Shown in pieces: positions 5,870 through 64,000 of a DNA stretch of 64,000 nt. Positions within the stretch are counted from its first letter, which is position 1, and each line of letters begins with the position of its first letter. The stretch spans positions 192,326,645 through 192,390,644 of the forward strand of contig NC_068982.1 in NCBI RefSeq assembly GCF_001194135.2. Direction: 5' to 3'. The DNA comes from Octopus bimaculoides. Its lineage: Eukaryota. Below the pieces are notes generated by a model that worked only from the letters and a program-made list of their open reading frames with translations, did no database searches and was not told the DNA's origin. The translations under genes and the position numbers were made by a program.

Positions 5870-6360
5870 ATGCTGATGGGACCAATAGGACACTACCTCT
5901 CCTTGAAGTGACTAACTTCTTTGAACCCCCCCCCCCTCCGGACAACTCCAGGAATGTAGGGGTGAAATTGAAGGAAAAAGATGCCACCCTTGGCTAACCT
6001 GTTTGTGTGCCATCATTGGGGCATGTTGGCAGGTAGTTGTCATCCTCATTGAGGCTTTTTGTGAGGGCTTAAAACATCTTATGGTGTAGGCACAAGACCA
6101 GAGAGATCTATGGAAATACTCCACCCATTTCTGCTATTGTTGCTCAATGCAAAGAAAGCTTTGCTGGCCAATGCTCTTGTGCTGAACAACAGACCATATT
6201 GGATATTATATAGTTTTGAACTATCCCCACACCAACAAAGAATGATGACCACTCAACTACATCGACATCATTGGCAGAGATACACAACATGGAATTGGGG
6301 GCCAACCAAAACTAATGGCATAGTCTAGTGAAATATATCTTGGCTGCAGCCACTTGAAGA
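5870..6360 (+). mobile_element. Highly decayed RTE-type LINE C-terminal remnant
   Basis: IYGNTPPISAIVAQCKESFAGQC resembles the RTE LYG.LPPIS...FAGHC motif. Confidence 0.4.
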
Positions 6361-10224: not shown

Positions 10225-10589
10225 GTTACCAGTGTCGCCTTCCTGGCACTTGTGCTGCAGCTTCGCGTTCCTGGCACGTGAAAAAAGCATTCGAGTGAAA
10301 TTGTTGCCAGTGCCGCTGGACTGGCTCCTGTGCAGGTGGCACGTAAAATACACCATTTTGAGCATTGCCGTTGCCAGTACCTCCTGACTGGCCTTTGTGC
10401 CAGTGCACGTAAAAGCACCCACTACACTCTCTGAGTGGTTGGCGTTAGGAAGGGCATCCAGCTGTAGAAACTCTGCCAAATCAGATTGGAGCCTGGTGTA
10501 ACCATCTGGTTCACCATTCCTCAATCAAATCGTCCAACCCATGCCAGCATGGAAAGCGGACGTTAAACGATGATGATGATGATGATGAT
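10225..10589 (+). mobile_element. RTE 3'UTR copy with TSD in a (TA)n tract
   Basis: Same 3'UTR. ATATATATATC occurs at 10214-10224 and 10588-10598. Confidence 0.85.
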
Positions 10590-10740: not shown

Positions 10741-11030
10741 CATCATCATCATCATCATTGTTTAACATCCGTTTTCCATGCTTGCATGATTTGGATGGTT
10801 TGACTGGAGACTGGCAAGCCAGGAGGCCGCACCAGGCTCCAATCTGATCTGGCACTGTTTCTACAGATGGATGCCCTTCCTAAAGCTAACCACTCCAAAT
10901 GTGTAGTGGGTGCTTTTTACATGTCACTGGCACAGGGAGCCAGTCAGGCAGCGACCCACACATGAATGAATGGTGCTTATCGTGTGCCACCAGCACTGGT
11001 AATGGCCACAACTACAATTTCCATTTGATT
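10741..11030 (-). mobile_element. RTE 3'UTR copy (older subfamily)
   Basis: (CAT)n-GTTTAACATCCGTTTTCCATGC...GATGCCCTTCC; reverse orientation relative to 10225-10589. Confidence 0.85.
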
Positions 11031-16159: not shown

Positions 16160-19017
16160 CATAGCTTCCCAAAGTGGGCAAAGGGCAAATTTCTGGAAAG
16201 TGGTGAGCGATTTGAGATTTTGGTGGGCAGTGTGAACATTTTGTGGGTGACTAAGAATTTTTAGAAAATAAGTCTGCATTTACTGATATCTAGGCATACC
16301 TAGAATAAGGATGCACTTTTATCGATTTGATTACTTGCATGAGACGTCCCTTTGTATTAAAAAAGTGGACTTGTTTATCCATCGAATATTTTTGTCACAC
16401 AGTCATTGAGATGGATGTCATGCATGCTAAAAATAGCAGCCAAATAGGCCTAGACTTTAAATCATACACCACCACAATTTTTGTTTTTTACATAATCATA
16501 TGAAGTCCTACGTGTAGAAAACAAATTCGCAAATATTTTCTGAAAACTTCAAAAAATAAAAGTGTTCTGTGGAATTATAAGTCGTGCATAATTCTACGGT
16601 TTCATATCAAAACACAAGTGCTATTTTCAGGATGTTGACAAAATGTGCAGCACACACAAAACGACAGCTTCGAAATCGTGTTTCTTGACTGGGTGAAAAT
16701 GATCAAACTTTAAACCTCTAAAACTTTTTTAAAACATTTTTCTGGAAAAAAGTTGAATAACTCCAGCAATTTAGCTTGGAAAGGTTCATTAATTTGCCAA
16801 ATTTTAAAATTTTCAATAAACTTTAATTTTTGAAATGCTGGCAGCCAAACGAACTAGATCCATATTTGCTCCAGTAAAGATGTTTTATCTGACTCTGCTC
16901 TATCGACTTCTTCTTCTTTTTGGGAATTCCGTACTGCCTTCCAGACACTATCCATAGAAATTCATTTTCACATTTTCAGTTTACTGATGCCTCCAGTCAA
17001 GAAAATTTGTCAACAGTACAGCAGTGATTATTTACCGTTTGGATTTATTCCCTCTCCTCAGAACTGTCAATTACCAATGTGGCTTCCTTGCCATCAAACA
17101 TTAACCAACGAAGCAATGAAACCTTCACGCTTGAAGTATCACTTTGATGCAAAGCATTCTGACAAGAAGGATAAACTGTTGTCCTACTTTTTGCAACTGA
17201 GTGCCTCTTTCAAAAAGCAAACAAACATTCAACACGCTACTCCAGAAACCCAGTAAACAAGAGAATGGCGGGTTGAATGCATCGTACAACATTGTATTGC
17301 TTGTTGCTAAGTCTGGCAAGTCTCACACAATTGGAGAAACATTACTTCGCCAGTTTATCGAAGAGGTTTTGTCAACCATTATGCACGGAAAACCCGATAA
17401 CATTATGAAGATCCCACTTGGTAATAACACAATTTCTCAACGCATCAATGAAATGGATAACAATGTCAAACATCAGCTCGTTAATACCTTCCAGTGTTCT
17501 GAATTTTCTATACAAGTGGGTGAGTCAACTGTTGTGGACAATCAATGTTTGATGATGGTATATGTTCAGTATTTCAGCAAAGACCTTCAGCCTTGTGAGG
17601 AAATGCTGTTCACAGAGAAATTGCCGCTTGATTCAAAAGGTACAAGTCTTTCCTTTTTGAACATAATATCCCACTCAGTAATATTCTTGCCTGTGCGTCT
17701 GATGGAGCCCCTTCGATGATAGGAAGATACAGAGGTTTTTCATCTCTCCTAAAGCGTGAAATTCCTCACCAGATACTAACTGTTCATTGCTTGGTACACT
17801 GGCAGTATTTAGTAGCAAAAAATATGAACGGTAGATTGAATGTGCGCTACAGTTAGTTATCGAGAGTGAACAAATTGAAGTCCAGTTCCTTGTCTGATCG
17901 AATTTTCCATTAACTCTGTCTGAGAAATGATGAGGACCATACTAAACTCTTACACCATACCCGAAGTGCGGTGGCTGTCAAAAGGAAACTGTATTTTAAG
18001 CTTTGTTGAACTGTTTCATATAATCATATCTTTCTTTGAAGATACTCCACTATCTGCCCCATTGATGGTTGCAAGGTGTGATATCTTTTTTTCTTTGTGA
18101 TATATTCACAAAATTAAATGATTTGAATATGTTATTGCAAGGAAACAGAAAAACTCTCATTGATTGTAAATCATTTATCACTGCCTTCATTTCGAAATTG
18201 GTGTTGTTTAAGACTAACATTTCAAAACGTCAATTCCGTCAAATTCCACAACTTGATTCTTTGAAAAATGAATCGGCTGATGAGGATTTAACTCCATATT
18301 GCAACTATTTTTAATCATTGCAAGATGACATGGTGGAGCGATTTCAAGATGTTATTGTGCTGAATATTTCAAATTGGTATAGCAACCTGTTTGAGGTCAA
18401 TGCAGTCAATTGCGAGGATAACGTTCCGGAGGAATTGATAGAATTACAAAATGACAATGATGCCACAATGCAATATTGTCATAATGGCAAAGAAGGTTTG
18501 TGGTACCACCAAAATATATTGAATTCCTACCCAAATTGGTGGAAACATCTGAAATTACAGCTGAAGTTGATAAGTTTGAAACCGAATGTAACTGCACTAG
18601 CTGCATCGCACCAGACACATGGTTGTATTCTTTTCCTTTATAATACAATCATTTATTATTTTTGCATCTTTGGTTCTGATCAATGGTCCATTTGGGAAAA
18701 ATAAAAAGCAGTGTAAAAGAAAGCACAAGTTTACCGAAGTTAATCTGTCAGCATAATATAGAGTTAACATTAGAATTCTATTCACACTAATGGCAAAACT
18801 AAACCCACAATAAGGGATTTGCAAACAACCACATATTTAATCCAAATGGCACTAACCAGGCAACAAGTCTATGATATAGTGTGTGTCGAATGATACAAGG
18901 GGATTTGGTGTTGGGCATGTCAGGGTTTTTTTTTTTTACACAGGTGGGCAATGGAGCATTATTTGGCCGATAGGTGGGCAATATTGCAATTTGGTGCGAA
19001 AAGTTTGGGAAACACTG
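16160..19017 (+). mobile_element. Buster/Charlie-type hAT DNA transposon, full-length but degenerate
   Basis: TIR-like ends CATAGCTTCCCAAAGT (16160-16175) and AGTTTGGGAAACACTG (19002-19017, revcomp CAGTGTTTCCCAAACT). Perfect 8-bp TSD CCCTAAAG at 16152-16159 and 19018-19025, matching the NNNTANNN preference of Buster elements. Internal transposase remnant. Confidence 0.93.
16987..18600 (+). pseudogene. hAT (Buster/ZBED5-SCAND3-like) transposase pseudogene
   Basis: BED-like N-terminus (QQYSSDYLPFGF...EAMKPSRLKYHFDAKH), KSGKSHTIGETL, FSIQVGEST (catalytic D replaced by G), HCLVHWQ, EVRWLSKG and FLCDIFTKLNDLN motifs, spread over several frames with stops and frameshifts. Confidence 0.9.
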
Positions 19018-20790
19018 CCCTAAAGCCTTCTATAGATTTGCAAAATCTTCTGCTTCAGTACAATACAAAATAGGGCCACTGTTAAAAAAAATGGTTCACT
19101 AACAGCAGACCCCAGAGGATAAGTGAAAGAGTGTTTTCATAACTCCATTGGGACATTTGGAAGTAGATATGCCTGATGAGTTCTTCAGCACTACAGCTCT
19201 ACACAAAGTAGAGGAAACAGATGTAATATCAGCCATTGATGAAATGTGCCCAAACTCAGCCACAGGCTCTGATGGATTCCCAGCAATCCTCCTGAAGAAA
19301 CACAAAGGGGCTTAAGCAAGACTACTACAGATTTAATTCCAGAGCTTCCTCACAACTGGGAGACTTTCCAAAAAGTTAAAGGAAGGCATAATATGTCCTA
19401 TCCATAAGGGTGGTAGCAGAGCAGATGCTAAAAATGATAGACCTGTCTCTCTAACCTTCCATGTCCAGCAAAGTCATGGAATATATTGTCAAGAGGAAAC
19501 TGATTGTGTTCCTCAAAGATAACGGCATACTCCCTGACACCCAGCTTTTGCAGCATTATGACTGAGCATTATGACTGAGTGTTGAAAACAACTAATGAAT
19601 TGCTCAAACGTGGATGTGATATATTTTGACTTTGCAAAGGCCTTTGATAAGGTCGATCATGGGATGATATGTCACAAGCTACAGAGACTTGGCATAACTG
19701 GGAAACTCAGAGAGTGGTTGCATGACTTCTTAAAAGGCAGAAGCCAGGCTGTAGCAGCCAACGGAGCCCACTCCAAGGAGACAGTAATAGAGAGTAGACT
19801 GCCTCAGGGAACTGTATTGGGGCCATTGCTGTTCATGGTTGCTCTTTCAGACATGCCATCAGTCACACAGATAGTCACACTTACTATCTATGCCAATGAC
19901 ACAAAAGTACTACATGCAGCCAAAAAACCTTCTGATGTTAATCTTCTACAGAAAGTCCTAGACGCCATATATAAATGGGCTGAAGAAAACAACATGCAAT
20001 TTAATGCAGGTAAATTCCAAGCCCTCTGCTACCAGTTAATTTGTGGCTTGTGCTGGCTCAATCCAGTTGTGGCTTGTGCTCACAAGCCACAACAACAAAA
20101 CTTTGAAGCAAAAGGAGTGGCAATCCCAGAGTTAAGTACAGTGCATGATCTGGGGATTGATATGAGCAACGATGCCTTATTTTATGGACATATAGTGTGT
20201 GATGTGGAGATTGATATAAGCAACGATGCCTCATTTTACGTGCACATCACCAAAATGGTGGTGGTGTACAGGTAAATGACCAGATGGACCAAGAAACTGT
20301 GATGGCTTTATGTAGGACATTTGTACTGAGCCGTTTGGACTACTGTTCTGAACTGTAGTCATGCTACAGTGTCAAATTAATAACAGAACTTGAGGCAGGA
20401 AGATTGCATCAATGGAACAGCTGAGAGACTGAAAGAGCTACAACTATACTCCCTGGAACAAGGACAGGAAAGGTATGCAGTGTATGGAAAATCCTGGAGG
20501 GGCTGGCACCAAACTTTGGTATCCAGAGCTATACCAGCCCCCTAACTGAATGTCATTTCACTGTTCCAAAGGTCCCAGTCATCTCGTCCAATGTAGTGCA
20601 ATAGCTTAGGATTAAAGGGTCCACAACTATTTAACGCCTTGCCAAAACATCTGAGGGATCTTGATGGAGTAGAGGTACATGTTTTCAAGAAATAATTTAA
20701 CCTCCTGCAATCCAAAGTCCTCAATGAACCTATATCAAGGCAGGAAACTCGAAAGAGGGCAGCAGTGTTGAACAGAGGTTCTCTTATATT
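19018..20790 (+). mobile_element. CR1-clade LINE ORF2 (reverse transcriptase) remnant, 3' part
   Basis: PKAFYRFAKS, SATGSDGFPAILL, YFDFAKAFDKVDHG, LPQGTVLGPLLF, YANDTK (YADD motif mutated), FNAGKFQ and C-terminal KGPQLFNALPKHLRDL; multiple frameshifts. Confidence 0.9.
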
Positions 20791-29667: not shown

Positions 29668-30956
29668 CATCATCATCATCATCATCGTTTAACGTCCGCT
29701 TTCCATGCTAGCATGGGTTGGACGATTTGACTGAGGACTGGTGAAACCGGATGGCAACACCAGGCTCCAGTCTGATTTGGCAGAGTTTCTACAGCTGGAT
29801 GCCCTTCCTAACGCCAACCACTCAGAGAGTGTAGTGGGTGCTTTTACGTGTCACCCGCACGAAAACGGCCACGCTCGAAATGGTGTNNNNNNNNNNNNNN
29901 NNNNNNNNNNNNNNNNNNNNNNNNNNNNNNNNNNNNNNNNNNNNNNNNNNNNNNNNNNNNNNNNNNNNNNNNNNNNNNNNNNNNNNNNNNNNNNNNNNNN
30001 NNNNNNNNNNNNNNNNNNNNNNNNNNNNNNNNNNNNNNNNNNNNNNNNNNNNNNNNNNNNNNNNNNNNNNNNNNNNNNNNNNNNNNNNNNNNNNNNNNNN
30101 NNNNNNNNNNNNNNNNNNNNNNNNNNNNNNNNNNNNNNNNNNNNNNNNNNNNNNNNNNNNNNNNNNNNNNNNNNNNNNNNNNNNNNNNNNNNNNNNNNNN
30201 NNNNNNNNNNNNNNNNNNNNNNNNNNNNNNNNNNNNNNNNNNNNNNNNNNNNNNNNNNNNNNNNNNNNNNNNNNNNNNNNNNNNNNNNNNNNNNNNNNNN
30301 NNNNNNNNNNNNNNNNNNNNNNNNNNNNNNNNNNNNNNNNNNNNNNNNNNNNNNNNNNNNNNNNNNNNNNNNNNNNNNNNNNNNNNNNNNNNNNNNNNNN
30401 NNNNNNNNNNNNNNNNNNNNNNNNNNNNNNNNNNNNNNNNNNNNNNNNNNNNNNNNNNNNNNNNNNNNNNNNNNNNNNNNNNNNNNNNNNNNNNNNNNNN
30501 NNNNNNNNNNNNNNNNNNNNNNNNNNNNNNNNNNNNNNNNNNNNNNNNNNNNNNNNNNNNNNGTACGCATGCGTCATACAGTCTGCCTTTTACTCTGAGT
30601 GAGAGTCCCTTTGTCGCCAGCAGGGGTAAGAGCTCTCTAAACTTTGCCCAGGCTATTCTTATTCTAGCAGCTACACTTTCAGCGCACCCACCCCCACTAC
30701 TAACTTGGTCGCCCAGATAGCGGAAGCTATCGACTACCTCTAGTTTTTCACCCTGGAATGAGATAGAAGTTGTTTCCTGTTTGTTTGCAGTCTTTATTGC
30801 ACCTGAACATCTGCCACAAACAAAAACTAACTTGCTAGTTAACCTGCCTTTGATGTTGCTGCACCTCTTATGTGTCCATAGCTTGCACCGGGTACATCTT
30901 ATAGAGTTACTACCTACTCCTTTTCTACATACTGAGCAGGGCCATCTACCTGAAGT
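29668..30956 (-). mobile_element. Young 5'-truncated RTE LINE with (GAT)n tail and target-site duplication
   Basis: Open ORF2 segment GRWPCSVC...[18 protein letters not shown]...[12 protein letters not shown]...KGRLYDACV, then a gap, then the 3'UTR and (CAT)n tail. Candidate 14-bp TSD ATATAAGAGAATAT at 29654-29667 and 30957-30970. Confidence 0.9.
30562..30956 (-). CDS. RTE ORF2 fragment: PHD-type zinc finger followed by the RT C-terminal region
   Basis: Uninterrupted frame. C-x2-C-x10-C-x2-C-x4-H-x2-C-x14-C-x2-C at 30807-30938, immediately upstream of the RT YLG motif. The copy is 5'-truncated, so it cannot be autonomous. Confidence 0.8.
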
Positions 30957-31314
30957 ATATAAGAGAATATAAGAGAATATAAGAGTAAAGGAAAAACAGG
31001 AATATAAAACAATGCAAGAACAAAGGAACAAATAAGAGTATAGGAGAAAATAGGAGTAAAGGAAAATAAAGGATTACAGAAAATAGGTTTATAATCTGAT
31101 ATAAGAAGACAGAGAAGGATGGTGAAAGAAAGAAAAAGAATAGAAATTAAAATTATATTTTTAAAAATGGAGAGAAAAAGGAAAAGAAGGAAAGAGAAAA
31201 CAAGGTAAAAAGAATAAAGATTTAATTGAGAAAAAAAAAACAGTAAAAAGTGGAAAGAGAGAATGAAGAAGAAAGAGAAAAAATTAGGGACAAAGAAAGA
31301 ACGAAAGCCAAACT

Positions 31315-33589: not shown

Positions 33590-33753
33590 TAACAGGCAGT
33601 ACCCAGTACACTCTGTAACATGGTTGGCATTAGGAAGGGTATCAAGCCATAGAAACCATACCAAAGCAGACAACTAGAGCCTAGTGCAGCTCTTCAGCTT
33701 GTCAGTTCCTGTCAAACCAGCCAACCCATGTCAGCATGCAAAACAAATGTTAA

Positions 33754-33787
<34 letters not shown>
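33590..33787 (+). mobile_element. RTE 3'UTR copy
   Basis: TTGGCATTAGGAAGGG...CCAACCCATG...(GAT)n. Confidence 0.8.
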
Positions 33788-50999: not shown

Positions 51000-51190
51000 T
51001 AAAACCAAGGTACCAGATAAAAAGCACCCAATATACTTTGTGGAGTGGTTGACATTAAGAAGGGCATCCAGCAGTAGAAACCAAGCCAAAACTATGGAAC
51101 TTGGTGCGACCTTACCAGTTTCTGTCAAGCCATCCAATCCAGGTCAGCAAGGGAGACAGACATTAAATTATGATGATGATGATGATGATT
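51000..51190 (+). mobile_element. RTE 3'UTR copy
   Basis: AAAAGCACCC...AAGGGCATCCAGCAGTAGAAAC...(GAT)n; sits at the upstream edge of the Gypsy remnant. Confidence 0.75.
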
Positions 51191-59496: not shown

Positions 59497-61702
59497 TCTT
59501 ACGCCAGTAAGCTACCAGCAAAATATGAAGAATCTTTACTAGAAATCGCCCTCCGACGTAAAGGATGAAATATAATTCAACCGTTTCACACACACACACA
59601 ACACACACTTGCTTTTATTATTATAAGTGAAGTAACTTCAGCCCAGAATAGAGAGCATGTCTTCACGTCGCTCGCCCTTCCACTTTAAATATTGATTTCT
59701 TTCATAGGTACAAGGCCATACATTTTGTAGGGAGGCGGTCGTCAAATCAGTCTATCTCCAAACATGACTGGTACTTCGTTTTTTTTAACTCAAGTCAATG
59801 AAAATGGCCATATCACAAAATATCTCAATTTTGGTAGTCGCCACTCTTCCGATTCTAGCAAGCACAACTATTAAAGGCGTGTAAGTTTAGAACTGCGACT
59901 ATGAAATCTTACATCAAACTTTTATTGGAAAAAAAAAATTGAGTCATTTCCATTTCTCTAATGTGAATTTTGCTATTAGTCGTGCTATGAAAAAGAAAAA
60001 AAGGTTTCAGCAAAAATCACAAGTGTAATTTGTTATGGATATTATTAACCCCACTCAGCGACTGAGCCCTGATCAAACAGATCTCTGATCAAAATCATTC
60101 CATCCGTAACCAGCCAGATCTTATTTTCCCGTGCATAGTCTATCTCGGACTACATTGCTAATATGCCCTTTAAAAAACGTGCGAAATCTGATTGTATTCG
60201 CAACAGACTATTAGGTTGTCTCCTTGGTTCATATTCTTAATGTAACATTGTTTAAAGGTTTGTTTGTACATAATGTGAAATTTGAGTAGTTTAACCAGTT
60301 CTTGCGCAAACATTTAACCATTAAAGTAAAATACTTAAAAATATATAATTGAAGTGGATATGACTAGCTAAAACAATGAACAGCTCTAAATATTGCTGTC
60401 TCAATTTTGTTTAGTTTTGGTAATGGCCACATCCTCACTTTATTGATATAATTATTGTCTGTCGCTATGTTGAGGTTCTCGGTTGCGATGTAATCGAAGT
60501 ATAGAAGAATGTTGGTATTTCCAATACAAAGGGAACAGTGACAGTTATTGCTTGGTTATTAGTACTGAGCATTTATAACAAACTACATGAATAAGCAATA
60601 AGTAATTCACTTGCTGAAAAATTATCGAATAAATCGTAATTTCGAGAATTTCCTAGATGCAACACATTTTACACGTCGTCAATATATTTTAATAAAAGTA
60701 TTTGCTACTAACAAAGCTTTGATGTTCCGTTCTATAAACAGAAGGGTGGAAGGGTTGAGAATCAGTTGTGATAAAGCTAAGCACATGATGAGCGATGTCT
60801 GCGACTCGGATTTGATTCCCATTTTATATGGAAATTCGCCACTTGGAATTAGGAGAAACCTTACAACTTCTCGTTTTCTTCGTCTAAAACCATCTCCAAG
60901 TCTTGCGCTTTTACAATAAAGGCACGTTTGTGCCTCCATACAATAAACGTGTTTAGCATGTGTTTGAATGTCGTTTCCTTCCTCTTTTTCGTTGTATTTT
61001 GTCTCATCTTTTCATATTACGCAGTCAGGCTTCGTTCATTTTGTTGTTATTTCGACAGGTCTTAATGACAATATACACAACAATCTATTTTAGTGGTATT
61101 CGTTGTAACTAATTCCCAAAACAGTTTCAAAACAAAGCATTCATTAAAGAACTATATAAAAACGCGCCAAAGCAATGTCTGTTTACGGAAAACACGTGCT
61201 GCTGCTTTTGTAAGGTATCTGCAGGGAGCGATTTTCCGTCAACTTTTTATTGAAGCTTTTCTAGCATTTACAGATGGGTTTTCACCGTCATTAAATTAGT
61301 AGTCTTCACAGAGGGCTAAATATCGATTTTCATCTTCGAATAGTCGCAAACGGCAATATTTTTGGAGCCTGCTCACACATCGCTTTCCTTCCTGGCAAGT
61401 AAAACTGTCTAGTATTGTGTCTTTAGTTTTACTTACATGGATTTATTTAGTGGCTAAATGTAAATATATCGTATATAATATCTTTTACTTATTTCAACCA
61501 GTGACCTACAGTCATGCTGGAGCACCATCTTGAAGGGTTATAGCCGAACAAATTTATCCCAGTATTGATTTTTTAAAAGCCTGGTACTATATTCTATCCT
61601 TCTGTTGTCGAACATCTGCTACGGGGTCGTAAACAAACCACCTTCGGCTTTCAAACAAGGTGGGGGGGGGACACAACACAAACACCAAGATGTGTGTGTG
61701 CC

Positions 61703-61990
61703 TCATCATCATTTAACGTTCGTTTTCCCAGCCAGCATGGGTTTGACGGTTTGACGGGAGCTGGCAAGCCAGAAGACTGCACCAGGCTCACTGTGTTTTG
61801 GCATGGTTTTTACAGCTGGATATTTTCCCTAATGCCAGCCACCTTACAGAGTGGTCTGGGTGTTTTTTTTACATGGCACCAGCACCAATAAGGTCTGCTT
61901 TGATATGTTTTTTTACAGCTGGATGCCCTTCCAAATGCCAACCACTTTACATTGTAGACTGGTTGCTTTTTACATGGCACCATCATTGAC
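61703..61990 (-). mobile_element. RTE 3'UTR copy
   Basis: CATCATCATTTAACGTTCG...GGATGCCCTTCC with an internal partial duplication. Confidence 0.75.
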
Positions 61991-62692
61991 CGGATTACCA
62001 AGTAATTTGCAAGACAAAGATCCTATGAGAGATGGGAGTTGTATTGGAGGACGTGGCCTTGTGCCAGGTAATGAGTGGTTAGGATATGATGGAGGGACAG
62101 AAACATGTGTCTTGCTGTAGAAGAGATATATGGTTATCCCAGTCAGAGAGAGAGAAAAAAGATGAGAGAGGGATGGTGGAAATGTGCTAGGGCATACCCT
62201 CAAGGTACAGGGATGAGAATATAAATAAGAATATTGCCAAGGTGCACAAGTCGGGAGAAGAAAGTTCAGATGAAAGCATATATGTATGTATGTATTGATT
62301 GCTTAACGTGTACAAATTTTATATATTAAGCAAAAGTACTTTTGAATATTTATTTATTTAGCACTTTTATATATATGTGAATTTAAAAAAATCTAGAACT
62401 GAATTGGAAAGAGAATGTTCTTTGTTATTTTGAATCTTTCTATGTGTGTATATATATGTGTGTGCATACATGTATGAGTATGTGTGGTGAATTCTTAGTG
62501 GCTTTGTTTGAAGGAGAAAAACAGAAAAATGAAAAACAAGAAGAGTCCTTTCTTCATGTCTTTCTTTTACTGTTTTTTTCCCACTAATCAAGCCTCCAAA
62601 AATTCACTACACGTTTACACATACATATATGCACACATGTAGCGTACGCTTGAGGGAAATTCCTCTCTCTCTTATATATACATAAATACAGA

Positions 62693-63551
62693 TGTAGTAG
62701 ATAACAGCCAGCCTTCGGCCACCCTTTTGGACCCTGTTATGTCCACTACTCTGATTGGTTGGTATTGGCGCAATTTGTCCCTTGCTCCATTGCGCGCCAA
62801 TATGCAACCCAACCAATCGCGGCCTTCAAATAAGGTCACGTGAGATAGTCTCTTCTAAACTTCCGGTGAGCCGACTGCACCCTATAAAACTTCAGCGACA
62901 CATCAAGTCGATATCTTTCGGTTCCAGACCTTTTGAGGTCTAGCCATTGACCACACAGGACACAGCCAGTTCTTAATGTTGTCAACATCATCTCTCTACG
63001 TACACAGCAACCAGCAACACTCACCCAGGTTCTATCACAACACTGTTCATGAATTACTTCACCATGGTTAACAGCAAATACAACCTGCAAGAACTCCTGT
63101 ACCAAGTGACCGGCAGCAGCATTGTAGCCACAACTTCATGTACGACTTGTACCTCAACCGGCTCTGCATTTCAGCCACAACTTCTTGATACTGCATTTCA
63201 ACTATCGTGTACCTTGACTACAAACTGGTATTTATCATCCTTGTGTCTGAACATTCTTCTAACGTCATATTATAGACTCTTTCAATGCTCTGTACTTATC
63301 GCACACGCATACATCTAAGTTTGTACACACATACACATTATGTATACATGATGGCCTGTCTATTATTATGTATATATGACGCACACACACGTTAACATAT
63401 AAATAAAATCTTCTCTTAAACATTTTGCCCGGTTGTGTCCCTCTTTTCCTTCTGGCACATATACGCATTTATTCTTTTCATATTTATTGTATCAACTGTG
63501 TGATGTGCAAAGGAGCCATTCTCATCACCTTACTTCGCACGATCGTTTACA
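62693..63551 (+). mobile_element. Candidate solo LTR (alternatively a compact host promoter/transcription unit)
   Basis: Begins TGTAG and ends TTTACA. Flanks are CAGA/CACA (3 of 4 match). Promoter motifs, TATAAAA (62883-62889) and AATAAA (63402-63407) lie in U3-R-U5 order. Confidence 0.5.
62753..62889 (+). promoter_or_regulatory. Pol II promoter motif cluster (4 CCAAT, E2F-like, CHR-like, E-box, ETS, TATA)
   Basis: ATTGG at 62754 and 62764; CCAAT at 62797 and 62813; TTGGCGC and GCGCGCCAA; TTCAAA at 62825-62830; GTCACGTGA at 62835-62843; CTTCCGG at 62860-62866; TATAAAA at 62883. Confidence 0.65.
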
Positions 63552-63688
63552 CACACATATAGGTTCAAAATAACAAAAAACATTCTCTTCCAAATTCAAC
63601 TCCAGATTTTTGCAGCTAATTCACATATATATCTAAAAGTCATAAATTTTCTGTCCAAATATCATTCCTAATGATTCTCTGAAACAAG

Positions 63689-64000
63689 ATCATCATCATC
63701 ATCATCGTTTAACGTCCGCTTTCCATGCTAGCATGGGTTGGACGATTTGACTGAGGACTGGTGAAACCAGATGGCTACACCAGGCTCCAATCTGATTTGG
63801 CAGAGTTTCTACAGCTGGATGCCCTTCCTAACGCCAACCACTCCGAGAGTGTAGTGGGTGCTTTTATTTGCCACCGGCACGAATGCCAGTCAGGTGGTAC
63901 TGGCAACGGCCACGCTCAAAATGGTGTATTTTATGTGCCACCCGCACAAGAGCCAGTCCAGGGGCACTGGCAACGATCTCACTCGAAAATCCTTACACAT
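63689..64000 (-). mobile_element. Young RTE 3' end (continues beyond the window)
   Basis: Nearly identical to 29668-29850 over the terminal ~180 bp; (CAT)n tail. Confidence 0.9.

What the first reader, a model, noticed from the sequence alone, without database searches (positions are those of the whole stretch)
62693..63551. Compact promoter-to-polyA unit with a palindromic NF-Y/E2F cassette plus CHR-like, E-box, ETS and TATA motifs: cell-cycle-wired solo LTR or small gene
Seen: within ~140 bp there are four CCAAT boxes arranged as an inverted repeat (62753-62818) enclosing two E2F-like sites (TTGGCGC / GCGCGCCAA), then TTCAAA (reverse CHR), GTCACGTGA, CTTCCGG and TATAAAA. AATAAA lies ~520 bp further on, and the unit starts TGTA and ends TACA. 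Known: NF-Y + E2F + CHR is the signature of DREAM/MuvB-regulated cell-cycle promoters in animals, and LTRs have TG...CA ends with promoter and polyA signal in this order. Inference: either a solo LTR carrying a proliferation/germline-timed promoter, which could spread cell-cycle enhancers genome-wide, or a short host transcript (31-aa ORF from 62976, 89-aa ORF at 63049-63318).
Basis: partly seen in the sequence, partly recalled or inferred. Interest (0 to 1): 0.7.

Follow-up and report, generated by a model that had tools for sequence, protein, structure and literature searches.

The report
Promoter-bearing LTR-like insertion in octopus repeat
The promoter-like motif cluster is real, but it sits on a roughly 0.9 kb, CpG-rich piece of DNA that was inserted into an older hairpin repeat, so it is most likely a solitary retrotransposon LTR (or similar mobile fragment) carrying its own promoter rather than a host gene, and its cell-cycle wiring is unproven.

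Summary
The cluster (four CCAAT boxes as a 10+9 bp palindrome, two E2F-like sites, a CACGTG E-box, an ACTTCCGGT ETS site) is well beyond chance. TTCAAA, TATAAA and AATAAA are each chance-level on their own.

New finding: the block interrupts a roughly 400-nt foldback repeat. Removing 62638-63557 restores one continuous hairpin (62356 pairs with 63647; 149 pairs). The block begins TGTA (62638), ends TACA (63551), and is flanked by a 6-bp duplication, CACACA.

The block keeps its CpGs (o/e 0.77; promoter part 0.90). The window average is 0.32 and the host hairpin has 1 CpG in 381 nt. This matches young SINE copies in the same window, so the block looks young or unmethylated.

There is no coding capacity, no Rfam hit and no second copy in the 64 kb. 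Genome-wide copy number could not be tested because no cephalopod DNA was reachable.

Best reading (0.42): a solo LTR with a compact Pol II promoter. DREAM/CHR membership fails on CHR position, the TATA box and CDE spacing. This is a new member of a known kind, of modest interest.

The parts
62356..62637 (.). Host foldback repeat: outer left arm (62356-62454), inner left arm (62459-62545), loop, and inner right arm (62555-62637). CpG-poor (1 CpG).
   Evidence: BLAST self-matches: 63548-63647 vs 62450-62356 at 81% (E 3e-20), and 62459-62637 self-reverse-complement at 76% (E 2e-28). Also (z -6.3). CpG o/e 0.16.
62632..62637 (.). Left copy of the putative 6-bp target-site duplication CACACA
   Evidence: Lies in a CA-rich context, so the support is only moderate.
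62638..63551 (+). Inserted block of 914 nt (LTR-like): TGTA...TACA ends, CpG o/e 0.77, no coding capacity, single copy in the window
   Evidence: Junction scan, empty-site folds, CpG, no second copy, no homologues
62654..62663 (+).
   Evidence: Read directly. I estimate a chance expectation of about 0.1 for the block, calculated by hand rather than by a tool.
62753..62818 (.). Palindromic cassette: outer near-consensus NF-Y sites (CCAACCAATCAG / CCAACCAATCGC) and inner CCAAT boxes overlapped by E2F-like or NFI-half-site letters (ATTGGCGC / GCGCCAAT)
62817..62830 (+). TCGCGG-CC-TTCAAA: a CDE-like hexamer, a 2-nt spacer, then an inverse CHR-like hexamer. It fails the CDE/CHR geometry.
   Evidence: Sequence. 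TTCAAA frequency. CHR rules.
62835..62843 (.). Palindromic E-box GTCACGTGA (USF/MYC/TFE type)
   Evidence: only 4 CACGTG in 64 kb
62859..62867 (-). ACTTCCGGT, the reverse complement of the high-affinity ETS consensus ACCGGAAGT
   Evidence: the only CCGGAAG in 64 kb
62883..62889 (+). TATAAAA box. It predicts a transcription start at about 62909-62916 (an inference with no data behind it).
62913..63422 (+). Predicted non-coding transcribed (R-like) segment of about 510 nt. Contains a 22-nt direct repeat (63119-63140 / 63166-63187) and a CA/TA-rich tract (63296-63410).
63402..63438 (+). Poly(A)-site-like context: AATAAA (63402-07), CA (63421-22), GT-rich TTGTGT (63433-38)
   Evidence: Sequence. 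Compatible with a poly(A) site but not statistically distinctive.
63552..63557 (.). Right copy of the putative 6-bp target-site duplication CACACA
63552..63647 (.). Host foldback repeat, outer right arm. It pairs with 62356-62454 and has no CpG.

Best explanation
The block 62638-63551 (914 nt) is a discrete and comparatively young insertion into the right arm of an older foldback (hairpin) repeat of about 400 nt. It has the anatomy of a solitary LTR left behind by an LTR retrotransposon.

Anatomy:
- 5'-TGTA...TACA-3' ends with a 6-bp CACACA target duplication.
- A U3-like part of about 275 nt holding a compact RNA polymerase II promoter: a palindromic pair of NF-Y sites overlapping E2F/NFI-like sites at about -160 to -95, an E-box at about -76, an ETS site at about -53, and TATA at -30.
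- A non-coding R-like segment of about 510 nt that ends at an AATAAA/CA/GT-rich site.
- A U5-like tail of about 130 nt.

In the parent element this promoter would have driven the element's own transcription using ubiquitous, proliferation-associated factors (NF-Y, E2F or NFI, USF/MYC, ETS). As a solo copy it can act at most as a stand-alone promoter or enhancer producing a short non-coding RNA.

Shown here: the insertion, its edges to within about 5 nt, the non-random motif cluster, CpG retention, and the absence of coding capacity.

Inferred, not shown: the LTR class, the transcription start, factor binding, and any activity.
For: Insertion into the foldback:
- On the left, the outer and inner arms are contiguous (62356-62454, then 62459-62545). 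On the right, their partners (62555-62637 and 63546-63647) are 908 nt apart.
- A scan of all deletion junctions peaks at 62637-62646 / 63538-63548.
- Joining the flanks gives one continuous hairpin with dG -88.5 to -97.1 kcal/mol. 62356 pairs with 63647, with 149 pairs.

Ends:
- TG at 62638 and CA at 63551, with identical 6-mers CACACA on both sides.
- Only 1.6% of random site pairs in the window give any TG..CA solution with a duplication of 4 bp or more.

Age or methylation contrast:
- The block has 29 CpG (o/e 0.77). The host hairpin has 1 CpG in 381 nt. The window average is 0.32.
- Young SINE copies in the window (93-96% identical) have o/e 0.54-0.72. Old copies (72-84% identical) have 0-0.27.

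Promoter cluster beyond chance.

No protein or known RNA.

Precedent: LTRs are the largest class of NF-Y sites in human cells, with NF-Y plus USF co-bound on MLT1 LTRs (PMC3730095; PMC12065363).
Against: - No second copy exists in the 64 kb, and genome-wide copy number could not be measured. The defining property of a repeat family is therefore untested.
- The duplication CACACA and the TG/CA ends lie in a CA/TG-rich tract, where such matches are much easier than the 1.6% window-wide figure suggests.
- An 18-nt direct repeat offers a competing, though worse-fitting, junction.
- An R segment of about 510 nt is long for an LTR.
- High CpG could reflect protection from methylation, as at a host promoter, rather than youth.
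- There is no PBS, PPT or pol sequence nearby. A solo LTR would lack these, so their absence is uninformative.
Confidence: 0.42

Rival explanations
1. A host RNA polymerase II promoter with the first (non-coding or 5'-UTR) exon of a gene or lncRNA. The small CpG island is kept unmethylated because the promoter is active in the germ line. Downstream exons, if any, lie beyond the window end at 64000.
For: - Near-consensus sites at canonical distances from a TATA box.
- CpG o/e of 0.90 in 62701-62930, the top 0.08% of 230-nt windows by CpG count, while 62931-63295 is depleted at 0.40.
- Single copy in 64 kb.
- The 33-nt spacing of CCAAT boxes at 62764 and 62797 resembles G2/M promoters (from my own knowledge; Fleming et al., mention multiple CCAAT motifs in G2/M promoters).
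Against: - The block sits inside one arm of a foldback repeat, with sharp edges and a flanking duplication. This needs an insertion event rather than an ancestral promoter.
- High CpG extends to the 3' end of the block as well (o/e 0.95-1.5 for 63296-63551), not just the promoter.
- No ORF has any homologue.
- A SINE follows 140 nt after the block.
Confidence: 0.2
2. A mobile or captured fragment of another class. One possibility is a non-autonomous DNA transposon with short imperfect terminal inverted repeats (TGTAGCGTACG / CGATCGTTTACA). Another is that the whole 62356-63647 segment is one 1.3 kb element whose roughly 100-nt arms are its terminal inverted repeats and whose interior carries a captured promoter fragment.
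For: - The ends show about 8 of 12 inverted matches, including the palindromic hexamers CGTACG (62643-48) and CGATCG (63540-45) (sequence).
- Long inverted arms flank the block.
- The 6-bp duplication is not exclusive to LTR elements (from my own knowledge).
Against: - The terminal inverted repeat is weak.
- The one-element model needs the inner hairpin to abut the outer left arm by coincidence so that removing the block restores a seamless hairpin.
- The CpG contrast between arms (0-0.16) and block (0.77) argues for different ages.
- There is no transposase remnant.
Confidence: 0.2
3. Non-functional DNA. The motif cluster is a by-product of a small local palindrome in a GC-rich patch, picked out after the fact. 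Alternatively, the block was placed here by a mis-assembly at CA/TG microsatellites in a gap-rich draft assembly.
For: - The palindrome doubles every motif in it, so there are effectively two independent CCAAT sites, not four.
- TTCAAA, TATAAA and AATAAA are chance-level.
- Both block edges lie in low-complexity CA/TG sequence, and the window has many N gaps.
Against: - The E-box, the ETS site (the only one in 64 kb) and the E2F-like sites are each rare, and they fall in canonical order upstream of a TATA box. The joint set occurred in 0 of 20,000 shuffles.
- There are no Ns within 62300-64000.
- A 6-nt or 18-nt overlap is too short to mislead an assembler (inference).
Confidence: 0.1

Closest known systems
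NF-Y-bound retroviral LTRs of mammals (ERV9/LTR12, MLT1, MER51; mouse RLTR10, IAPLTR)
   Same: An LTR U3 region with several CCAAT boxes acting as promoter or enhancer. NF-Y is paired with an E-box factor (USF) on MLT1. Solo LTRs are the commonest form (PMC3730095; PMC12065363).
   Different: - No sequence relationship was tested or is expected, because the host here is a cephalopod.
- The CCAAT boxes here form an inverted repeat, not tandem repeats.
- The CCAAT to E-box gap is 19 nt, not the '10 bp' module of MLT1.
- Family status (copy number) is unverified.
DREAM/MuvB-regulated G2/M promoters (CDE/CHR plus CCAAT boxes)
   Same: Multiple NF-Y sites, including one pair 33 nt apart. E2F/CDE-like GC letters. 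A TTCAAA that matches the inverse CHR shown to function in Ube2c and Plk4 (PMC4176359).
   Different: - The CHR-like hexamer is about 85-90 nt upstream of the predicted start, not on it.
- The promoter has a TATA box.
- The CDE-like TCGCGG is 2 nt, not 4 nt, from the hexamer and on the wrong side for an inverse CHR.
- The hexamer is chance-level in this AT-rich DNA.
Foldback / hairpin (MITE-like) repeats as insertion targets
   Same: The host sequence is a long imperfect palindrome of about 400 nt (arms 73-84% alike) with a short loop. It gives sub-threshold hits to MITE-derived plant miRNA hairpin models.
   Different: No other copy of this foldback is in the window. Its family, ends and duplication were not determined.

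Membership tests
Solo LTR of an LTR retrotransposon | 5'-TG...CA-3' termini forming a short inverted repeat | tested here: met
   TGTA at 62638-62641 and TACA at 63548-63551, at the edges defined independently by the interrupted foldback. The flanks are low-complexity, so this is weak on its own.
Solo LTR of an LTR retrotransposon | Target-site duplication of 4-6 bp flanking the element | tested here: met
   CACACA at 62632-62637 and at 63552-63557. Random site pairs give a duplication of 4 bp or more in 1.6% of trials, but the CA-rich context makes a chance match much easier here.
Solo LTR of an LTR retrotransposon | Multiple genomic copies with the same boundaries, some paired around gag-pol with PBS and PPT | not testable with these tools
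   No second copy in the 64 kb. No cephalopod genome DNA is reachable: two metagenome scans and one viral scan found nothing, the protein collection holds no raw ORFs of this genome, and the best octopus RT hit has no contig.
Solo LTR of an LTR retrotransposon | U3-R-U5 order: enhancer/promoter, TATA, then poly(A) signal | tested here: met
   Motif cluster 62753-62867, TATA at 62883, AATAAA at 63402 with CA and a GT-rich stretch downstream. These are motif matches only, and the implied R of about 510 nt is long.
DREAM/MuvB CHR cell-cycle promoter | CHR (TTTGAA or a validated variant, either orientation) on or very close to the transcription start | tested here: not met
   TTCAAA at 62825-62830 lies 58 nt upstream of the TATA box and about 85-90 nt upstream of the predicted start. 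The rule is from PMC4176359. The TSS is predicted, not measured.
DREAM/MuvB CHR cell-cycle promoter | Usually a TATA-less promoter | tested here: not met
   TATAAAA at 62883-62889. The rule is from PMC4176359.
DREAM/MuvB CHR cell-cycle promoter | CDE 4 nt upstream of the CHR (in the subset of promoters that has a CDE) | tested here: not met
   TCGCGG (62817-62822) is separated from TTCAAA by 2 nt, and the hexamer is inverted. PMC4176359 notes that most CHRs work without a CDE, so this is not decisive.
DREAM/MuvB CHR cell-cycle promoter | Two or more NF-Y CCAAT boxes upstream, typically about 31-33 nt apart | tested here: met
   ATTGG at 62764 and CCAAT at 62797 are 33 nt apart. The outer sites match the extended NF-Y consensus. 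The spacing rule is from my own knowledge.
DREAM/MuvB CHR cell-cycle promoter | Binding by DREAM/MMB and G2/M-peaked expression | not testable with these tools
   Requires ChIP and expression data from cephalopod cells.
Protein-coding or known RNA gene | An ORF with homologues or domains, or a match to a curated RNA family | tested here: not met
   - The six-frame chimera query found no hit among 5.8 billion proteins.
- Pfam found nothing significant.
- The full HMMER scan of 1.84 billion representatives gave only two weak hits (E 2e-5 and 2e-4) to unrelated repeat proteins. One carries SpaA-type Pfam domains; the other carries lectin and FG-GAP repeats.
- Rfam gave 0 hits at gathering thresholds, and no sub-threshold hit inside the block beyond its first ~20 nt, where weak hairpin-model hits run over from the adjacent host hairpin. 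No tRNA.

The most novel reading that the evidence does not exclude
A young, still-mobile cephalopod LTR family whose U3 carries a palindromic NF-Y/E2F cassette with E-box and ETS sites. This would tie transposon transcription to proliferating or germ-line cells and scatter ready-made proliferation-responsive promoters or enhancers through the octopus genome.
Probability: 0.1. Interest if true: 0.5.

Novelty: new member of a known kind. Interest (0 to 1): 0.3.

Why it matters
If the block proves to be one copy of an LTR family, it would be an invertebrate (cephalopod) counterpart of the mammalian NF-Y-bound LTRs. It would also be a candidate source of transposon-borne promoters in a genome known for heavy repeat content. 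That would be useful for annotation and for studies of regulatory evolution in cephalopods, but it would not be conceptually new. If it is single-copy, it marks an unannotated non-coding transcription unit. In either case, the interrupted foldback provides a clean presence/absence marker that can be checked in other octopod genomes.

Tried and rejected
1. Second copy in the window: blastn with word sizes 9 and 7, and nhmmer, found only microsatellite noise.
2. Known RNA: Rfam at gathering and E-value thresholds, and tRNA search, found nothing inside the block beyond weak hairpin-model hits that run over from the adjacent host hairpin into its first ~20 nt. A sliding fold scan found only the DNA palindrome to be structured.
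3. Coding:
   - Exact look-ups of 10 ORFs found none in the collection.
   - A six-frame chimera search found nothing.
   - Pfam found nothing significant.
   - An exhaustive HMMER search gave two weak hits (E 2e-5 and 2e-4) to unrelated repeat proteins, which I rejected as compositional.
4. External DNA: cassette and E-box/ETS/TATA patterns run against JGI metagenomes (two scans) and IMG/VR (one scan) gave 0 hits.
5. Sampling octopus loci through transposon proteins was abandoned.
   - The collection holds no raw ORFs of this genome.
   - The only clearly octopus RT hit has no contig.
   - This also means the negative protein results say nothing about copy number.
6. The 18-nt direct repeat CGTTTACACAYACATATA (62612 and 63544) as a LINE-type duplication: it restores the hairpin less well (dG -77.5 against -88.5 to -97.1), cuts 8 paired bases, and there is no A-rich or simple-repeat tail.
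8. Helitron, Tc1/mariner (TA) and hAT (8 bp) signatures at the edges were checked by eye and none fits.
9. A B-box-like GGTTCCAGACC (62920-62930) raised a SINE/tRNA idea. There is no A box and no ARAGORN hit.
10. The bacterial promoter/terminator scan is irrelevant here.

Full report
**Context**

The window is a gap-rich draft assembly, 37.6% GC, with CpG o/e of 0.32. It is full of the tRNA-derived octopus-type SINE, with copies at 63689-63990, 61703-61990, 29669-29863, 10290-10586, 1740-2030 and elsewhere. It also holds LINE reverse-transcriptase fragments. The ORF at 19595-20272 matches Pfam RVT_1, and its best named relative is an Octopus 'jockey-like' protein at 69% identity. The finding lies 450-1300 nt from the right end of the window.

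**Observation check**

The four CCAAT boxes are two perfect inverted pairs:
- GATTGGTTGG (62753-62762) with CCAACCAATC (62809-62818).
- TATTGGCGC (62763-62771) with GCGCCAATA (62794-62802).

As single-stranded DNA the cassette folds at -17.5 kcal/mol, z = -4.0.

The cluster is unusual for this sequence:
- It is the only 70-nt stretch in 64 kb with four CCAAT/ATTGG.
- The window has only 5 E2F-like sites (2 here), 4 CACGTG, and a single CCGGAAG, which is this one.
- In dinucleotide shuffles of 62700-62900, four or more NF-Y sites appear in 0.25%, two or more E2F in 0.8%, an E-box in 4% and an ETS site in 2%.
- The combination with a TATA box appeared in 0 of 20,000 shuffles. A 10-nt perfect inverted repeat appeared in 0.9%.

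Several sites also match extended consensus sequences (these consensus sequences are from my own knowledge): CCAACCAATCAG for NF-Y, ACTTCCGGT for ETS, and GTCACGTGA for USF/TFE.

By contrast, three motifs carry no weight alone. TTCAAA/TTTGAA occurs 101 times per 64 kb and in 15.5% of shuffles. TATAAA occurs 87 times per 64 kb. For a single AATAAA I estimate an expectation of about 0.6, calculated by hand from base composition. The motif list was assembled after the fact, so all p-values flatter the finding.

- BLAST of the region against the window shows that 63548-63647 is the reverse complement of 62356-62450 (81%, E 3e-20).
- It also shows that 62459-62637 is its own reverse complement (76% over 182 nt, E 2e-28).
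- On the left, the two arm segments are contiguous, with a 4-nt gap. On the right, their partners are 908 nt apart.
- Scanning every possible deletion junction, the arm-to-arm alignment score peaks when 62638/62642 to 63545/63551 is removed.
- Joining the flanks in silico gives one continuous hairpin from 62356 to 63647, with 149 pairs and dG from -88.5 to -97.1 kcal/mol depending on the exact junction.
- The block therefore entered the right arm of a pre-existing foldback repeat of about 400 nt.
- At the structurally defined edges it begins TGTA (62638) and ends TACA (63551). It is flanked on both sides by CACACA (62632-62637 and 63552-63557).
- A TG..CA solution with a duplication of 4 bp or more is found for only 1.6% of random site pairs in the window. 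The local CA/TG richness makes it far easier here, so I count it as moderate support.
Its right edge is correct.
- A competing junction built on an 18-nt direct repeat (62612 and 63544) restores the hairpin less well (-77.5 kcal/mol) and removes eight bases that pair with the left arm.

**Age and methylation signal**

- The block holds 29 CpGs (o/e 0.77). Its promoter-like part, 62701-62930, has 12 CpGs (o/e 0.90), the top 0.08% of 230-nt windows by CpG count.
- The foldback around it has 1 CpG in 381 nt.
- The SINE copies give an internal yardstick. Copies 93-96% identical to each other have o/e 0.54-0.72, and copies 72-84% identical have 0-0.27.
- The block therefore looks much younger than its host repeat, or shielded from germ-line methylation. 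High CpG also holds in its 3' 250 nt, which favours youth over promoter-only protection. The middle part (62931-63295) is depleted at 0.40, so the signal is not uniform.

**No gene product**

- None of the ORFs is in the 15-billion-protein collection.
- A chimera of all 15 reading-frame pieces found nothing.
- Pfam found nothing above noise.
- The exhaustive HMMER scan of the 113-aa frame gave two weak hits (E 2e-5 and 2e-4). One was to a protein with SpaA-type repeat domains and the other to a protein with lectin and FG-GAP domains. The two are unrelated to each other, and I take both hits as compositional.
- Rfam and tRNA searches were empty inside the block, apart from weak hairpin-model hits that run over from the adjacent host hairpin into its first ~20 nt.
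- Only the DNA palindrome stands out in a fold scan.
- One caveat applies. The collection does not hold raw ORFs from this genome at all, so these negatives say nothing about copy number.

**Mechanism**

The layout fits U3-R-U5:
- A U3-like part of about 275 nt with a kB-like GGGAAATTCC (62654-62663), the NF-Y/E2F-like palindrome, an E-box, an ETS site and a TATA box.
- A predicted start at about 62909-62916.
- About 510 nt of non-coding sequence.
- AATAAA (63402), CA (63421) and a GT-rich stretch (63433-63438).
- A tail of about 130 nt.

I take it as most likely a solitary LTR whose promoter recruits ubiquitous, growth-associated factors. Transcription, factor binding and activity are all inferred.

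LTRs rich in NF-Y sites are well known in mammals. About 40% of NF-Y sites in K562 cells lie in LTRs, and NF-Y is co-bound with USF on MLT1 (PMC3730095; PMC12065363). The CCAAT to E-box gap here (19 nt) is not the '10 bp' module described there.

**The cell-cycle (DREAM) reading**

PMC4176359 confirms that inverse TTCAAA CHRs can function. It also places validated CHRs on or next to the TSS, usually in TATA-less promoters. Here the hexamer is about 85-90 nt upstream of the TATA-predicted start, the promoter has a TATA box, and the CDE-like TCGCGG is 2 nt away on the wrong side. Membership is therefore not met.

'Works somewhat like a proliferation-linked promoter' remains possible through NF-Y and E2F alone. 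However, ATTGGCGC and GCGCCAAT can equally be read as NFI half-sites (from my own knowledge).

**Limits**

The decisive test is genome-wide copies and paired copies around gag-pol. It could not be run:
- Two metagenome scans and one viral scan found nothing.
- No cephalopod genome DNA is reachable through the protein-anchored tools.

**Rivals kept**

- A host promoter with its first exon (0.20).
- Another transposon class, or a 1.3 kb inverted-repeat element with a captured promoter (0.20).
- A non-functional motif cluster or an assembly artefact (0.10).

**Verdict**

This is a real, non-random promoter-like module on a real insertion. It is most likely a solo LTR, the DREAM wiring is unsupported, and it is a new member of a known kind. 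Interest 0.3.

Noticed in passing
window 62356-62637 plus 63552-63647: A foldback (hairpin) repeat of about 400 nt with arms 73-84% alike. The inner hairpin 62459-62637 folds with z = -6.3 and draws sub-threshold Rfam hits to MITE-derived plant miRNA hairpin models. There is no other copy in the window, and its family and ends are undetermined.
   Followed up: partly
I estimate a chance expectation of about 0.1 for the block, calculated by hand.
   Followed up: no
window 63689-63990, 61703-61990, 29669-29863, 10290-10586, 10742-10948, 1740-2030, 33598-33773, 51020-51186: At least eight copies of the octopus-type SINE, which starts TCATCATCATC(G)TTTAACGTCCG. CpG o/e falls from 0.54-0.72 in copies 93-96% identical to each other to 0-0.27 in copies 72-84% identical. 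This gives a usable within-window age yardstick.
   Followed up: partly
window 60600-61400: An AT-rich (about 35% GC) stretch with undepleted CpG (o/e 1.1-1.4; 17 CpG in 61000-61500), against a window average of 0.32. It has no ORF over 102 aa. It was not tested for homologues and lay outside the 62401-64000 query used for repeat matching. It could be a young repeat or an unmethylated region.
   Followed up: no
window 19595-20272 (+) and 30572-31031 (-): LINE remnants. The first is an RVT_1 reverse-transcriptase ORF, 69% identical to an Octopus 'jockey-like' protein. The second is an ORF with a PHD-type zinc finger next to an N gap. ORFs at 17201-18704 look hAT-like by eye but have no Pfam hit.
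   Followed up: partly
window 62926-62941 and 63119-63187: Inside the predicted transcript there is a small hairpin AGACCT-TTTG-AGGTCT about 15 nt after the predicted start. There is also a 22-nt direct repeat, GCATTGTAGCCACAACTTCATG / GCATTTCAGCCACAACTTCTTG, with copies 47 nt apart. Their meaning is unknown.
   Followed up: no
window 6155-6300: The only other place in the window with four CCAAT/ATTGG within 140 nt. It has no palindrome and none of the accompanying E-box, ETS or E2F-like sites by eye.
   Followed up: no
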